The position numbers and the translations under genes are program-made. Of a DNA stretch of 64,000 nucleotides, positions 1,589-6,589 are shown piece after piece. Positions within the stretch are counted from its first letter, which is position 1. Each line of letters opens with the position of its first letter. Location: positions 124,001 through 188,000 of IMG/VR virus record IMGVR_UViG_3300047319_001872; one strand, 5' to 3'. The notes beneath the pieces are model-generated. The model was not told the DNA's origin. It searched no databases and saw nothing but the letters and a program-made list of their open reading frames with translations.

Positions 1589-1657
1589 GATCGTGTCCTT
1601 GAAAGAGAGGATGAACTACACAAGATTTCATCCTCTCTCGGCGCGCGTTACTGCTGC

Positions 1658-2662
1658 TTAGACGACGTGCGTGCCTTCGACTTCCCGTGCAATACGGGCG
1701 CGCGTACGACGCTGCAGGGCTTCGATCGCGGCGTTGATGTGATCCAGTGCTTCCTGGTTTTCGTCACAGGCGAACTTGCCGTCCTGGAAACCTTGCAGGC
1801 GATGACCGCAGGCCGCGAGCACAGCTTCGAGCGTGACGCCGTTCTGACCGACCACCGGCACCACACCGTTCTGGAACAACAGGTGCAGCATCAGGCTTTG
1901 GCCAGCGTAGCCTTCTTCCAACACCGACGGATGCGTTTCCGCATTGAAGCCCGAGAAGACGTAGTAGTGATTCGCACCGCTGACTTCGTTGGCGTTATCG
2001 CCGACGGCGACGAGCAGCTGCGTGTCTGCACCTTCGACCAGATGTTGGGTAATCACGGCACCCTTCTGGCGACCGAGGGCGCGCGCCTGCGCTTCCTGTT
2101 CCAGCCGCACAGCAGTATCTTCCGGTGACTCACACGGGTCGCCCAGATGATCGCCTGCTGCATCCGTTTCGTAAGCGGCAGTGATGACGATGTCTTCGAG
2201 CGGCACGTCTTGATGAAAGCCCCTGCTGCCGGTCTTCACCTGACGGATCGCGTCGATCACTTCTTCACCGACGATCACCTTGCCGAATACAGCGTAGCCC
2301 CAGCCTTGCGGCGACAGCGACGAGTGATTCAGGAAGTCGTTGTCGTTCACGTTGATGAAGAATTGCGCGGTTGCCGAATGCGGGTCGTTCGTGCGAGCCA
2401 TCGCGATCGTGTACAGTTCGTTCTTCAAACCGTTTTGCGCTTCGTTCGCGATCGGTGCATCCGTTTCGCGTTGGGTCTTCATGTTGGCTTCAAAGCCGCC
2501 GCCTTGCACCATGAAGCCGTTGATCACGCGATGGAAGATCAGACCGTTGTAATGGCCCTTGTTCACGTAAGCGAGGAAATTCGCGACAGTCTTGGGGGCA
2601 CGCTCATCGTCGAGCTCGACGAGGAAGTTACCCTTGGTGGTTTCGAATAGAGCGTGTTTCAT
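1658..2662 (-). CDS. cyclophilin-type peptidyl-prolyl isomerase fused to a C-terminal Tad1-like domain
   Basis: aa1-165 has [35 protein letters not shown] (PpiA/B family); aa~203-334 has [44 protein letters not shown] (Tad1 pattern). Confidence 0.85.
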
Positions 2663-2706: not shown

Positions 2707-3468
2707 TTAAACCGGATGGTATTCGGGTGAAGCCCGATACCGCGCAGCGAGCGTGTCTGCTGCAACAGCTTGCAGGTTTTCCTGCGAGACATACTGCGGC
2801 GCTCTGAGCGCGTTCAAGCGATCGATGTCCAGATCGTAGCCAACGAGCATCACGTCGGTGAGTACAATCTGAACGAGGTCGTCCCGAATCTTCTTGCGAA
2901 TGTCGTCATCGGCCAGCGCAGGCGTATCGGGAAACTGGAATCCCCCCTCGCCGATTTGCGACGCGTAGAAACACGTGTCACCCAGGTGCAGATTCACCCG
3001 ACCGGCGACTTGCGCTTCAACCGTGATAACAATGCCCGCGGCTGTGAACGGATCGATCACGTTCAAAATCTTGCCGTTGACGTCACGCGTGTAGCGATCC
3101 AGGCGAACCGAAAGTCGGTGATCTTTCAGCTCGATCGTACGGTACGAGCCAGTAGGTCCGGGACTCAACGGCACATTGATCGGTGCACAGACGTACTGCT
3201 CGCCGATCTGTAGATAGACGTTTTCCAGCAATGCCTTGTGACCGATGTGATCCGTCATGTCGAGAAGCGCTGTCTCGAGTAGCGCTTTGGTTTCTCCCAA
3301 TGCCAGCACTGAGAACGCCGCCCCAAAGCGATACGGTGCCGTGAGGACCGCCTCGTCGTCGATCGTCGCACTGCGTTGCAGATCTGCCACAATGTAACTG
3401 GCGGCTTCCGGTCGCACGATAGGAACAATCCGTGCCCCGCGGAACCGTTTGAATTGTTGTGCTTCCAC
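2707..3468 (-). CDS. hypothetical protein
   Basis: ORF track 2707-3609; likely GTG start at 3468 after AAAGGA. Confidence 0.65.
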
Positions 3469-3609
3469 TTTCCGTCCTTTTCTTTTAAGTTTGTTGACGC
3501 ACTCCACAGATTGCTCTTTGATACTTCTCTGTCTTACCGTCCTTCTTTCGATTAAAGCGGTAGTCCTCAACAGGGTCGTCGACACGTGAGGGCGTGTCGT
3601 TTGGACCAA

Positions 3610-3955
3610 AGAACTTTCTGCAGGCTGCGTCCCTTACTTAGTCATCGACTTATCGTTGGCTTGCGAGTCCAACCTTACGTCACCTTTTCGTTTCAGGGTA
3701 CAACTTGCCTTGACTCCGGTAGCACCGTAAGTCTTAGCCGGACGATTTGAGTCAGCGTATCAACTTGGCGGTATCTCGCTGGTGTGTACATACCCGACGG
3801 GCAGCACACCTCCTAAAAGGATCGTGAACCTTTTGCTCTTAGGGGAGCGAGAACTCCCCTTTCGCGGGCGTTACACCCACGAATTACCAATCGTCCCTTG
3901 AGAAGGGTGTCTTAACAGATGGACGATTGATAACCGTTGCCGACTTGCACGGCTC
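3610..3955. ncRNA. ORF-poor, hairpin-dense region (candidate structured RNA or long leader)
   Basis: Inverted repeats AATCGTCC/GGACGATT, AGGGGAG/CTCCCCT, AAAAGG/CCTTTT, GGTGTG/CACACC, TGACTC/GAGTCA, GTTGG/CCAAC. Confidence 0.4.
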
Positions 3956-3968
3956 ATCAGAGAGCTTA

Positions 3969-5740: not shown

Positions 5741-6130
5741 TTATTGATCGTCCGGCGGAAAGTCCTCTAGCGGAATCGTGACTCCTGCCAGCTTATGGGT
5801 CGAATCACCACAGTACACCAGATAGCCGCCTGTGATGAAGTAGTGGCACACCACATCCACTATTTGCTCATAATGATCGGGCTTTCGCGTGGGCAAATCG
5901 AGTCGCTCGTCAAAGCGTCGCGTATAGCGCAGCAGCAGCGACGGATGGCAGGTAAGTTGTTCGTTGAATTGACCATTCCACGTCCAGACAGGATGTGGGT
6001 GGGCTTGAAGCTGCTGTGCAACATAAACCACATGGTTCATATCGCACGCAGGACAGTAGTGAACAATTCCGATTCGATGATTCGGATCTTTCGAATCGAC
6101 CAGCCAGCGCAACTTCTTCGAGTCAGTCAT
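5741..6130 (-). CDS. DUF6527-like Cys/His metal-binding protein
   Basis: HYCPACDMNH, WTWNG, HPSLL, CHYFITGG, GDSTHKLAG. Confidence 0.6.
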   Translation of the reverse strand: MTDSKKLRWLVDSKDPNHRIGIVHYCPACDMNHVVYVAQQLQAHPHPVWTWNGQFNEQLTCHPSLLLRYTRRFDERLDLPTRKPDHYEQIVDVVCHYFITGGYLVYCGDSTHKLAGVTIPLEDFPPDDQ

Positions 6131-6232
6131 GATCCTCCGTCCATACTGCGACGCCATAAAGCCAAAAAAAAAAAGATGGGGTAAGAGGAGGCGAGTCAGA
6201 CACCCGAAGGCATCTGACTCACAGAATGAAGC

Positions 6233-6589
6233 TCACGCTGGCATGCAGCAAAGCTCCTGGCCTAAGAGGATGTGATTAAAGCGCTGGGCGACTGTGTCTT
6301 GGGCGGCATACAGCCACTGGATGCACTGCAAGCACATGTAGGCGAGTACCGCTAGAGCTGTGATCGGCAAGCCCACGAACCAGGCACCAAAGGCCAAGAA
6401 GGTGTAGACGAGCACGGCAATCACCATCTCCGTGCCGGGGATGAGATTCGCCGAGAGGAACGACTTTTGCAGCCAGAGCGTCAGCTTGCTTTGGGGGTCT
6501 TGAATCGTGAGAGAGACGAACGCCCTCACGACCCAGAACGCGACCAGCGCAACGAAGACGACCAGACCGATTGCGTATGCGATGGCCAT
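6233..6589 (-). CDS. membrane protein
   Basis: Three hydrophobic segments. Confidence 0.7.
   Translation of the reverse strand: MAIAYAIGLVVFVALVAFWVVRAFVSLTIQDPQSKLTLWLQKSFLSANLIPGTEMVIAVLVYTFLAFGAWFVGLPITALAVLAYMCLQCIQWLYAAQDTVAQRFNHILLGQELCCMPA

What the first reader, a model, noticed from the sequence alone, without database searches (positions are those of the whole stretch)
1658..2662. Cyclophilin fused to a Tad1-like immune-signal sponge
Seen: one uninterrupted 334-aa ORF joins a complete cyclophilin (aa1-165, active-site motifs intact) through a ~35-aa linker to a domain matching the Tad1 pattern (GANHYY...FQNG...GVT...[18 protein letters not shown]...A...L.RRT..RI.R.V.GT). Established: Tad1 proteins sequester Thoeris gcADPR and CBASS cyclic-nucleotide signals. 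I know of no described cyclophilin-Tad1 fusion. Inference: oligomerisation through Tad1 would make a multivalent prolyl isomerase, or the isomerase helps fold or localise the sponge.
Basis: partly seen in the sequence, partly recalled or inferred. Interest (0 to 1): 0.78.

Follow-up and report, generated by a model that had tools for sequence, protein, structure and literature searches.

The report
Cyclophilin–Tad1 fusion in jumbo phage
A giant Burkholderia-type phage really does encode one protein joining a host-derived prolyl isomerase to a Tad1-type sponge for bacterial immune signals, sitting in a conserved cassette with a truncated capsid-protein copy and a large structured RNA; it is a new architecture of a known anti-defence family, not a new kind of system.

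Summary
A 334-aa ORF on the MINUS strand (1658-2662) joins a complete PpiB-type cyclophilin (aa 1-165) through a ~37-aa linker to a Tad1 domain (aa ~203-334).

Tad1 membership is supported by sequence (PhiKZ gp184/Tad1 E 6e-17; CbTad1/CmTad1 E 1e-6 to 1e-5) and by fold (pLDDT 93; all 20 significant PDB matches are Tad1). All four gcADPR/cyclic-dinucleotide pocket residues are kept (F292, N302, R319, R323). The cyclic-trinucleotide pocket and most hexamer-interface residues are not kept.

The fusion is not an artefact. It recurs in cultured phage FLC9 and in several metagenomic jumbo phages, and contigs from other samples bridge the junction.

Cyclophilin, a truncated major-capsid-protein paralog and Tad1 form one cassette that occurs in three permuted or fused arrangements. 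PhiKZ Tad1 is reported in the literature as a head-packaged, protease-processed, injected protein, and this genome has the PhiKZ-type head protease.

Most likely function: a gcADPR/CDN sponge with an active PPIase, probably linked to capsid delivery. That last step is inferred.

Verdict: new variant of a known kind; moderate interest. Side finding: a ~500-nt structured RNA with a hammerhead-like 5' core lies just upstream.

The parts
1658..2662 (-). Cyp-Tad1 fusion gene, 334 aa plus stop
   Evidence: ORF list and sequence. Identical protein on 4 contigs. Junction bridged by contigs of other samples.
2168..2662 (-). Cyclophilin (PpiB-type PPIase) domain, aa 1-165
   Evidence: PF00160 E 4.6e-45. 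Best solved match 3s6m, E 6e-77. Nearest cellular relatives are Burkholderiaceae PpiB at 70-73%. All 11 catalytic/substrate-binding positions are invariant in 8 phage copies.
2057..2167 (-). Acidic, proline-containing linker (aa 166-202) ending in the conserved motif ARALGRQKG
   Evidence: No domain hit. Contains one S-P-E match to the head-protease motif at aa 179-181 (motif recalled from memory; weak evidence). The motif is conserved among Cyp-Tad1 homologs.
1661..2056 (-). Tad1 domain (aa 203-334): antiparallel beta-sheet plus two C-terminal helices
   Evidence: PDB sequence hits to PhiKZ gp184 and to CbTad1/CmTad1. AF2 model pLDDT 93.4. The top 20 Foldseek PDB hits are all Tad1. F292, N302, R319 and R323 align with CbTad1 F82, N92, R109 and R113 and are invariant or nearly invariant in the family.
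1604..1639 (-). 12-bp hairpin (GAGAGAGGAUGAA...UUCAUCCUCUCU) 18 nt after the stop codon; possible end of the transcription unit
   Evidence: Read directly from the sequence. The simple terminator scan did not flag it because there is no T-run.
2707..3468 (-). Truncated major-capsid-protein paralog (253 aa from a GTG start preceded by AAGGA), immediately upstream
   Evidence: PF25620 PhiKZ_MCP E 7e-10. Start placed by alignment with homologs. AF2 model pLDDT 79.9; the only significant fold matches are PhiKZ MCP 8y6v and phi-kp24 MCP 8bfl (E 4e-14, TM 0.64-0.70 over about 230 residues). The same module is fused to Tad1 in P0004, P0006, P0007 and P0008.
3469..3968 (-). Conserved ~500-nt structured RNA (leader or ncRNA) directly 5' of the cassette
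   Evidence: 80.8% DNA identity to FLC9, while the flanking proteins are 32-58% identical. Seven or more copies, always at this position. RNAalifold gives 147 pairs, 45-46 of them compensatory. Energy is -151 against -56 for column shuffles, and the sense strand folds better than the antisense. No Rfam match. An exact 182-nt contig is present in a soil metatranscriptome.
3835..3965 (-). 5' domain of that RNA with a hammerhead-like core (stem I GCUCU/AGAGC, CUGAUGAG, branched stem II, CGAAA, stem III, U-A)
   Evidence: The MFE fold reproduces the junction, z = -7.0. Compact versions with covarying stems occur in other metagenome contigs. Rfam hammerhead models do not report it. Self-cleavage is untested.

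Best explanation
The gene encodes a two-domain counter-defence protein of a PhiKZ-like jumbo phage that probably infects Burkholderia or a close relative.

Shown by computation:
- The C-terminal 132 residues are a Tad1-family domain whose gcADPR/cyclic-dinucleotide pocket is intact.
- The N-terminal 165 residues are a cyclophilin captured once from a Burkholderiaceae ppiB. Its composition has since drifted to match the phage, and its whole active site remains under selection.
- The gene is the last member of a conserved cassette: structured RNA leader, truncated major-capsid-protein paralog, cyclophilin, Tad1. Sister phages carry the three protein modules as separate genes, as a single Cyp-MCP-Tad1 protein, or as MCP-Tad1 with a neighbouring Cyp.

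Inferred:
- The Tad1 domain pairs into at least dimers and soaks up Thoeris gcADPR signals, and possibly CBASS cyclic dinucleotides. It probably does not bind cyclic trinucleotides, because that pocket is replaced.
- The cassette is a device for loading the sponge into the capsid, so that it enters the next cell with the DNA, as reported for PhiKZ gp184/Tad1.
- The cyclophilin serves this process in one of two ways: by holding a proline-bearing segment of the capsid-like partner, or by speeding refolding of the cargo after passage through the tail.
For: Tad1 identity:
- Sequence matches to solved Tad1 and to PhiKZ gp184.
- Model pLDDT 93.4, with an exclusive fold match to Tad1 structures.
- Pocket residues F82, N92, R109 and R113, defined by mutagenesis in 10.1101/2023.11.15.567273, map to F292, N302, R319 and R323, which are invariant or at least 90% conserved in 55 family members.
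- The family is large, and about 40% of its best 150 representatives carry N-terminal extensions.

Cyclophilin:
-.
- Seven fused copies form one clade (100/99 support) nested in Burkholderiaceae PpiB.
- GC is 55.4% against 56.2% for the genome.
- All 11 active-site positions are invariant, against 82 of 163 positions overall.

Cassette and capsid link:
- Three arrangements at syntenic loci.
- The neighbouring gene is a truncated MCP by HMM and by fold.
- 8 of 55 extended Tad1 relatives carry the same MCP fragment.
- PhiKZ gp184 is a minor capsid protein cut by the head protease gp175 (PMC11297242). It is described as Tad1 that is injected (10.1101/2025.11.23.690004; PMC13282480).
- This genome has a gp175 homolog (35% identity, E 8e-38) and a PhiKZ-type MCP.

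Plausibility:
- ThsB-type TIR proteins occur in 6 of 94 Burkholderia species genomes.
- A phage counter-defence protein using PpiB has a precedent: P22 Abc2 (PMC9836394).
Against: - No binding, PPIase or virion data exist for this protein or for any Cyp-Tad1 homolog.
- The protein has no PhiKZ gp184-like N-terminal region. Its N-terminus is the cyclophilin itself.
- In this phage the capsid-like module is a separate protein only about 27% identical to the fused module of P0004. Their association is conjecture.
- Matches to the head-protease motif in the linker are short and expected by chance in an acidic, Ala-rich linker. The position is not conserved.
- The cyclic-trinucleotide pocket and most CmTad1 hexamer-interface residues are replaced, so the oligomeric state is unknown.
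- The stand-alone Cyp of the L008 phage does not group with the fused clade in the best tree, although one clade is not rejected (AU p = 0.39).
- No Shine-Dalgarno sequence is visible before the ATG.
Confidence: 0.6

Rival explanations
1. Cytoplasmic two-in-one effector. The protein is simply made after infection and is never packaged. Tad1 sponges signals, while the cyclophilin has an independent role: solubility, oligomer scaffolding, or a second counter-defence activity on a proline-dependent host protein. The truncated MCP neighbour has an unrelated job, for example as a decoy for capsid-sensing defences.
For: - The protein has no recognisable capsid-targeting N-terminus.
- Classical Tad1 proteins are small cytoplasmic proteins.
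- P22 Abc2 shows that PpiB can take part in counter-defence in the cytoplasm.
- The truncated MCP is a separate gene here.
Against: - The three modules are kept adjacent and are repeatedly fused in different orders, including a single Cyp-MCP-Tad1 polypeptide. That is hard to explain if they act independently.
- The nearest characterised relative is head-packaged.
Confidence: 0.28
2. Structural reading. The Tad1-like domain in this jumbo-phage lineage is mainly a minor capsid or inner-head component that has lost ligand binding. The fusion is a capsid-assembly factor in which a PPIase helps capsid protein folding.
For: - PhiKZ gp184 is annotated as a structural protein and is seen in the vertex-binding complex.
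- The neighbouring gene is MCP-like.
- Hexamer and cyclic-trinucleotide residues have diverged.
Against: - The four ligand-pocket residues are among the most conserved columns of the family, this clade included.
- The Tad1 domain of gp184 is evidently not the part modelled in the capsid map: 8y6v chain I is absent from the fold hits despite about 40% sequence identity.
- PhiKZ gp184 is non-essential.
Confidence: 0.08
3. Artefact: a chimeric assembly or a mis-called ORF that joins a bacterial ppiB to a phage gene.
For: - Metagenomic contigs break inside the conserved cyclophilin core at about 2357-2372.
- Bacterial ppiB reads pile up there, with a depth spike at 2283-2456.
Against: - The same fusion is in a cultured, completely sequenced phage and in many independent contigs.
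- Contigs in other samples bridge the Cyp C-terminus, linker and Tad1 domain with 0 differences.
- The cyclophilin GC content matches the phage, not Burkholderia.
- The phage cyclophilins form their own clade.
Confidence: 0.01

Closest known systems
PhiKZ gp184 (PhiKZ Tad1; PDB 8y6v chain I)
   Same: It is the best sequence match to the C-terminal domain (E 6e-17, about 40% identity over 110 residues). It shows the same pattern of a kept gcADPR pocket with replaced cyclic-trinucleotide-pocket residues. The Tad1 domain is C-terminal, behind an N-terminal extension. Both are jumbo phages with a PhiKZ-type MCP and head protease.
   Different: The gp184 N-terminus is a ~120-aa acidic, beta-rich capsid-bound region with mapped protease sites. 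Here the N-terminus is a complete cyclophilin, and the candidate capsid module (a truncated MCP) is a separate upstream gene.
Stand-alone Tad1 sponges (SBSphiJ7 Tad1, CbTad1 7uav/7uaw/8smd, CmTad1 8kbb-8kbd)
   Same: Same fold (TM 0.65-0.83). The gcADPR/CDN pocket residues F82, N92, R109 and R113 are conserved, as is the C-terminal lid motif (G/E)VEGT.
   Different: Sequence identity is only about 25%. The cyclic-trinucleotide pocket (R90/T97 in CbTad1; R88/T95 in CmTad1) is D300/D307 here. CmTad1 hexamer-interface residues K96, Q98, E99, M102 and W103 are H, N, A, E and A here. This protein is fused, not a 125-140-aa protein.
Bacterial cyclophilin PpiB (Burkholderiaceae PpiB; E. coli PpiB 2nul/1lop)
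   Same: 70-73% identical to Burkholderia and Paraburkholderia PpiB. Every catalytic and substrate-binding position is identical.
   Different: It is phage-encoded, sits on a long branch, has ameliorated GC content, and is covalently joined to an anti-defence domain or, in relatives, to a capsid-protein fragment.
P22 Abc2-PpiB complex on RecBCD
   Same: A phage counter-defence protein that works together with a PpiB-type cyclophilin, with a proline placed in the isomerase active site.
   Different: Abc2 recruits the host enzyme non-covalently and targets RecBCD. Here the phage carries its own copy fused to a signal sponge. No client proline has been identified.

Membership tests
Tad1 (Thoeris anti-defence 1; Pfam PF24729 Acb2/Tad1 hairpin) | Significant sequence similarity to experimentally characterised Tad1 proteins | tested here: met
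   phmmer against PDB: PhiKZ gp184 6e-17, CmTad1 1.2e-6, CbTad1 1.2e-5. Precomputed Pfam PF24729 is on the identical protein. My own hmmscan did not list PF24729 at E <= 1.
Tad1 (Thoeris anti-defence 1; Pfam PF24729 Acb2/Tad1 hairpin) | Fold: N-terminal antiparallel beta-sheet followed by two long C-terminal helices | tested here: met
   AF2 model pLDDT 93.4 with strands followed by helices 79-95 and 101-126. The top 20 Foldseek PDB hits are all Tad1, at probability 1.00; the next hit has E 0.78.
Tad1 (Thoeris anti-defence 1; Pfam PF24729 Acb2/Tad1 hairpin) | gcADPR / cyclic-dinucleotide pocket residues (CbTad1 F82, N92, R109, R113) | tested here: met
   They align to F292, N302, R319 and R323. 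N and R319 are invariant, and F and R323 are at least 90% conserved, in 55 relatives.
Tad1 (Thoeris anti-defence 1; Pfam PF24729 Acb2/Tad1 hairpin) | Cyclic-trinucleotide pocket (CbTad1 R90/T97; CmTad1 R88/T95) | tested here: not met
   D300 and D307 occupy these positions. PhiKZ gp184 has E and N there.
Tad1 (Thoeris anti-defence 1; Pfam PF24729 Acb2/Tad1 hairpin) | Hexamer (trimer of dimers) assembly | tested here: inconclusive
   CmTad1 interface residues K96, Q98, E99, M102, W103 and K106 align to H308, N310, A311, E314, A315 and R318. No multimer prediction or experiment was possible.
Tad1 (Thoeris anti-defence 1; Pfam PF24729 Acb2/Tad1 hairpin) | Binds gcADPR and rescues phage from Thoeris | not testable with these tools
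   This needs ITC or native-gel binding assays and plaque assays.
Cyclophilin-type PPIase (PF00160), PpiB subfamily | Full-length domain above the curated cut-off | tested here: met
   154 bits against a cut-off of 21.7; profile positions 4-157 of 159.
Cyclophilin-type PPIase (PF00160), PpiB subfamily | Catalytic Arg and the substrate-binding set (hCypA R55, F60, M61, Q63, A101, Q111, F113, H126 equivalents; numbering from memory) | tested here: met
   R45, F50, M51, Q53, M88, A89, R90, Q100, F102, W121 and Y123 are identical to Burkholderiaceae PpiB and invariant in all 8 phage copies.
Cyclophilin-type PPIase (PF00160), PpiB subfamily | Prolyl isomerase activity | not testable with these tools
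   This needs a protease-coupled peptide assay.
PhiKZ gp184-type head-packaged, protease-released cargo | N-terminal capsid-bound region like that of gp184 | tested here: not met
   The N-terminus is the cyclophilin. There is no LEWLASLES-type N-terminal motif.
PhiKZ gp184-type head-packaged, protease-released cargo | The genome encodes the PhiKZ-type MCP and the gp175-type head protease | tested here: met
   PF25620 652 bits. gp175 homolog at 35% identity, E 8e-38.
PhiKZ gp184-type head-packaged, protease-released cargo | Protease site (S/A/G-X-E; motif recalled from memory) between the N-terminal part and the Tad1 domain | tested here: inconclusive
   S179-P-E and A224-N-E are present, and every homolog has at least one such triplet in its linker. 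The positions are not conserved, and the motif is short.
PhiKZ gp184-type head-packaged, protease-released cargo | Present in purified virions | not testable with these tools
   No proteomics of FLC9 or its relatives was found.
Hammerhead ribozyme (for the 5' domain of the upstream RNA) | Core CUGAUGA ... GAAA ... U-H in type-I order, with covarying stems I and III | tested here: met
   The core is invariant across 10 divergent copies. Stems I and III covary.
Hammerhead ribozyme (for the 5' domain of the upstream RNA) | Three-stem junction recognised by the Rfam hammerhead models | tested here: not met
   Stem II is replaced by two or three hairpins. There is no Rfam hit at E <= 1 or E <= 0.1. 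I therefore do not file it as a hammerhead; it is only a lead.

The most novel reading that the evidence does not exclude
The cassette is a dedicated pre-loading device for counter-defence. A truncated capsid-protein paralog docks into the head lattice. The phage's own cyclophilin acts either as a proline-clamp adaptor to that paralog or as an in-cis refolding catalyst for cargo squeezed through the tail. Tad1 therefore arrives with the DNA, before Thoeris can signal. This would be the first case of a prolyl isomerase working as part of a phage protein-injection or anti-defence delivery system. Expression of the cassette would be set by a large structured leader RNA carrying a new branched hammerhead-like self-cleaving motif.
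Probability: 0.2. Interest if true: 0.8.

Novelty: new variant of a known kind. Interest (0 to 1): 0.55.

Why it matters
Tad1 is one of the few characterised phage sponges for immune second messengers, and PhiKZ Tad1 is described as the only known anti-defence protein of jumbo phages.

This locus shows that in one jumbo-phage lineage the sponge is evolutionarily tied to two unexpected partners: a host-derived, active-site-intact cyclophilin and a truncated major capsid protein. Their permuted fusions work as a natural Rosetta stone for a functional link. If the link is capsid loading or post-injection refolding, it would explain how a sponge can be present before the defence fires, and it would give prolyl isomerases a role in phage counter-defence.

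The pattern of pocket residues also makes a testable prediction about ligand range: gcADPR and cyclic dinucleotides should bind, cyclic trinucleotides should not. FLC9 is a cultured phage carrying the same genes, so all of this can be tested directly.

Tried and rejected
- **Assembly artefact:** rejected.
- **Internal translation start producing free Tad1** (an AGAAGGG-GTG at aa 203): rejected. The SD-like sequence is absent in L010, and FLC9, L006 and L008 have no start codon there.
- **Head-protease motif as evidence of processing:** counted in all homologs but judged uninformative, because the motif is short and its positions are not conserved.
- **Pfam PF24729 by my own hmmscan:** not reported for this protein even at E <= 10 on the isolated domain. 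Only the precomputed table lists it, so I relied on PDB, PHROG, fold and residue evidence.
- **Neighbouring small genes:** no Pfam or PHROG function, except phrog_3362 of unknown function.
- **Sigma-70 promoter scan:** nothing found.
- **Rfam on the upstream RNA and on nine other motif-bearing contigs:** no family, apart from one tRNA in L101.
- **FLC9 literature:** no proteomics and no mention of the gene. The Goslar virion paper reports no gp184 homolog observed in its cryoEM map.
- **The Nature 2024 Tad1 paper** could not be opened. I used its preprint, which does not mention PhiKZ. The PhiKZ gp184 = Tad1 and injection statements therefore rest on two secondary sources.
- **Not tested:** whether the phage encodes chimallin or PhuZ. 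I therefore call it PhiKZ-like, not nucleus-forming.
- **Full-length structure prediction** was not run. The two available jobs went to the Tad1 domain and the truncated MCP.
Full report
**1. Observation**

Window 1658-2662 holds an uninterrupted 334-codon ORF on the minus strand, with ATG at 2662 and TAA at 1660-1658. The plus-strand reading of the same coordinates is broken by stops. Pfam places a complete cyclophilin at aa 6-163 (PF00160, E 4.6e-45, 154 bits). The C-terminal third matches three PHROG families of unknown function (E 1e-25 to 3e-16). It also matches solved structures by sequence: PhiKZ gp184 (8y6v chain I, E 6e-17) and the Tad1 structures 8kbb, 8kbh, 8kbg, 7uav and 8kbe (E 1e-6 to 2e-5).

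**2. The cyclophilin half**

The best solved match is 3s6m (E 6e-77). I recall this as a Burkholderia pseudomallei PPIase; that is from memory and the tool gives no organism. A scan of species genomes shows that the nearest cellular relatives are Burkholderiaceae PpiB: Burkholderia multivorans 73%, B. stagnalis and B. lata 72%, Paraburkholderia 70-71%.

In a maximum-likelihood tree of 8 phage and 80 bacterial sequences, the seven fused phage cyclophilins form one clade (support 100/99) on a long stem, nested among Burkholderiaceae sequences. A stand-alone phage copy (L008) sits beside Paraburkholderia/Trinickia, but a single phage clade is not rejected (AU p = 0.39).

The domain's GC content (55.4%) equals that of the phage genome (56.2%), so the capture is not recent. 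Eleven catalytic and substrate-binding positions are identical to bacterial PpiB and invariant in all eight phage copies, although only 82 of 163 positions are invariant among the seven fused copies. The isomerase site, or at least the proline-binding site, is under selection.

**3. The Tad1 half**

A full HMMER scan of 1.8 billion cluster representatives with aa 200-334 found 3,155 clusters at E <= 1e-3. Many are stand-alone proteins of 125-140 aa that align from query residue 4-5 onward, so the domain begins near aa 203. By length, roughly 40% of the best 150 carry N-terminal extensions.

An AlphaFold2 model built on 55 relatives has pLDDT 93.4 and pTM 0.84, with beta-strands followed by two long helices. 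In Foldseek against the PDB, all 20 significant matches are CbTad1 or CmTad1 (probability 1.00, TM 0.63-0.83). The next hit has E 0.78.

The Tad1 preprint defines three sets of residues by structure and mutagenesis:
- the gcADPR/cyclic-dinucleotide pocket: CbTad1 F82, N92, R109, R113;
- the cyclic-trinucleotide pocket: CbTad1 R90/T97, equivalent to CmTad1 R88/T95;
- the hexamer interface: CmTad1 R88, T95, K96, Q98, E99, M102, W103, K106.

In the HMMER alignments the first set maps to F292, N302, R319 and R323, which are invariant or at least 90% conserved across the family alignment. The trinucleotide pair maps to D300 and D307. Interface residues K96, Q98, E99, M102, W103 and K106 map to H308, N310, A311, E314, A315 and R318. 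PhiKZ gp184 shows the same pattern.

My prediction is binding of gcADPR and perhaps cyclic dinucleotides, no canonical trinucleotide site, and an oligomeric state that is open beyond the dimer. The genome has only this one Tad1 domain.

**4. What is known about the closest relative**

8y6v is the PhiKZ capsid. [quoted passage not shown] A transposon-mutagenesis preprint calls orf184 tad1 and finds it non-essential. [quoted passage not shown] A 2026 review says the same and calls Tad1 the only anti-defence protein described in jumbo phages.

Chain I of 8y6v does not appear among my fold hits, although its sequence is about 40% identical to this domain. The Tad1 domain is therefore evidently not the part modelled in the capsid, which fits that picture.

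I found no paper that mentions a cyclophilin-Tad1 fusion.

**5. Distribution and the cassette**

Word-indexed searching found the identical protein on four contigs, three further Cyp-Tad1 proteins (325-332 aa), two 530-aa proteins and two 346-376-aa proteins. Pfam shows that the long ones are Cyp + PhiKZ_MCP fragment + Tad1, and that the last two are PhiKZ_MCP fragment + Tad1. Of 55 N-terminally extended Tad1 relatives from the deep search, 8 carry that MCP fragment and none a cyclophilin.

Gene neighbourhoods show three arrangements at one syntenic locus:

| Arrangement | Where |
|---|---|
| (i) Stand-alone Cyp gene directly upstream of MCP-fragment-Tad1 | L008 |
| (ii) One Cyp-MCP-fragment-Tad1 gene | L006 |
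| (iii) MCP-fragment gene followed by Cyp-Tad1 | this window, FLC9 gp132/gp131, L010, L096, L100 |

In this window the upstream gene is 2707-3468 (minus strand). Its GTG start was placed by alignment and is preceded by AAGGA. It matches PF25620 (E 7e-10). Its model (pLDDT 79.9) matches only the major capsid proteins of PhiKZ and phi-kp24 (E 4e-14, TM 0.64-0.70 over about 230 residues). It is a truncated MCP paralog.

Three modules that stay adjacent and are fused in different orders argue that they work together.

**6. Genome context**

The window is bases 124001-188000 of a complete 313,315-bp virus record with terminal repeats. The genome has a PhiKZ-type MCP (652 bits), a second MCP fragment elsewhere, and a homolog of the PhiKZ head protease gp175 (35% identity, E 8e-38).

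Its nearest cultured relative is Burkholderia glumae phage FLC9. ThsB-type TIR proteins occur in 6 of 94 Burkholderia species genomes, so the defence that makes gcADPR exists in the likely host genus.

The gene lies in a long run of small minus-strand ORFs without recognisable function. A 12-bp hairpin follows its stop codon.

**7. Independent sequence support**

Many rhizosphere metagenomes hold the stretch. Contigs from two samples other than the likely source span 1500-2357, one with no differences and one from a variant strain. Both cross the Tad1 domain, the linker and the C-terminal third of the cyclophilin (to about aa 102). Contigs break at about 2357-2372, where reads of bacterial ppiB pile up.

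**8. Mechanism**

Shown by computation:
- a Tad1 domain with an intact gcADPR/CDN pocket;
- an active-site-intact, host-derived cyclophilin;
- a conserved cassette with a truncated MCP;
- a PhiKZ-type head protease in the genome.

From the literature: PhiKZ Tad1 is head-packaged, processed and injected.

Inferred:
- This protein sequesters Thoeris signals.
- The cassette loads it into the capsid.
- The cyclophilin either clamps a proline-bearing segment of the capsid-like partner or catalyses refolding of the cargo.

A precedent for a phage counter-defence protein using a PpiB cyclophilin is P22 Abc2. It co-purifies with host PpiB, and its Pro68 most likely sits in the isomerase site (PMC9836394).

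The main rival is a purely cytoplasmic bifunctional protein. The data cannot exclude it, because this protein has no gp184-like N-terminus, the MCP fragment is separate here, and protease-motif matches in the linker are uninformative.

**9. Side finding: a structured RNA upstream**

The only stretch of the first 6 kb with DNA-level identity to FLC9 (80.8%) is the ~500-nt non-coding gap 3469-3968, directly upstream of the cassette. It is single-copy in the genome. It is present at the same position in every phage with arrangements (ii) or (iii), and absent from the L008 phage.

RNAalifold on six copies predicts 147 pairs, 45-46 of them with compensatory double changes. Energy is -151 kcal/mol, against -56 on average for column shuffles (which give at most 18 compensatory pairs) and -126 for the antisense strand. 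Rfam has no match. A soil metatranscriptome contains an exact 182-nt contig inside it (3624-3805) and nothing exact from the flanking genes (its other laid pieces are mismatched bacterial ppiB); DNA carry-over cannot be excluded.

Its first ~130 nt (3835-3965) fold into a closed junction with, in order:
- stem I, GCUCU/AGAGC;
- CUGAUGAG;
- an invariant hairpin;
- an insertion hairpin and a further hairpin;
- CGAAA;
- stem III;
- U-A.

This is a hammerhead core in type-I order but with a branched stem II (z = -7.0). Compact ~100-nt versions with covarying stems I and III occur in other metagenome contigs, in one case directly before a ribosome-binding site.

Hammerheads are common in phage intergenic regions, and U15.1-A16.1 variants self-cleave, less efficiently than typical hammerheads (PMC3088659). 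Because the three-stem definition is not met and Rfam's models do not report it, I record it as a lead, not as a hammerhead.

**10. Verdict**

The finding is real and correctly named at domain level. It is a new architecture within the known Tad1 family, and its nearest relative, PhiKZ Tad1, is already published. The added value lies in:
- the cyclophilin/truncated-MCP/Tad1 cassette;
- the predicted narrowing of the ligand range;
- a cultured phage, FLC9, in which everything can be tested.

Interest is moderate (0.55).

Noticed in passing
window 3469-3968 (minus strand); also L001:4716-5243, L006:4434-5012, L010:3688-4215, L096:5919-6442, L097:4793-5321, L100:1459-1981: A ~500-nt conserved, strongly structured non-coding RNA lies directly 5' of the cassette. 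It has 147 predicted pairs, about 45 of them compensatory. Energy is -151 against -56 for shuffles. There is no Rfam match. An exact 182-nt piece is present in a soil metatranscriptome. Its function is unknown: leader, processing element or independent ncRNA.
   Followed up: partly
window 3835-3965 (minus strand); compact copies in L099, L102-L108, partial copy in L101: A hammerhead-like core (CUGAUGAG ... CGAAA ... U-H, type-I order) with a branched stem II and covarying stems I and III. The Rfam hammerhead models do not report it. If it self-cleaves, the predicted cut lies between 3840 and 3839. It could be an undescribed hammerhead variant or a different motif.
   Followed up: partly
window 2707-3468 (minus strand); second copy at G000:C1:85966-86616: The genome carries two truncated paralogs of its own PhiKZ-type major capsid protein. 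One is the cassette partner. In sister phages this fragment is fused to Tad1, with or without the cyclophilin.
   Followed up: partly
window 2283-2456: In soil and rhizosphere metagenomes the depth rises 10- to 100-fold over the conserved cyclophilin core, because bacterial ppiB sequences map there, and phage contigs break at about 2357-2372. This is a general trap for assembling host-derived genes in phage genomes.
   Followed up: yes
window 1604-1639 (minus strand): A 12-bp perfect hairpin sits 18 nt after the Cyp-Tad1 stop codon, without a T-run. It may be a phage-type terminator or a processing site.
   Followed up: no
L006:1630-2043, L010:1521-1910, L008:10056-10319 (related loci); window 5741-6157 is the likely counterpart: A small gene with a Pfam PF20137 (BubE) hit recurs near the cassette (upstream of it in L006 and L010, downstream in L008), and DUF8308 genes recur downstream. 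The window ORF 5741-6157 hits only phrog_3362, of unknown function. I did not examine whether this region is an anti-defence island.
   Followed up: no
L101:5913-5994 and 6346-6442: In an unrelated 243-kb metagenomic contig, the RNA's 5' motif lies about 350 nt downstream of a tRNA gene. A short cyclophilin-like fragment is about 2 kb upstream.
   Followed up: no
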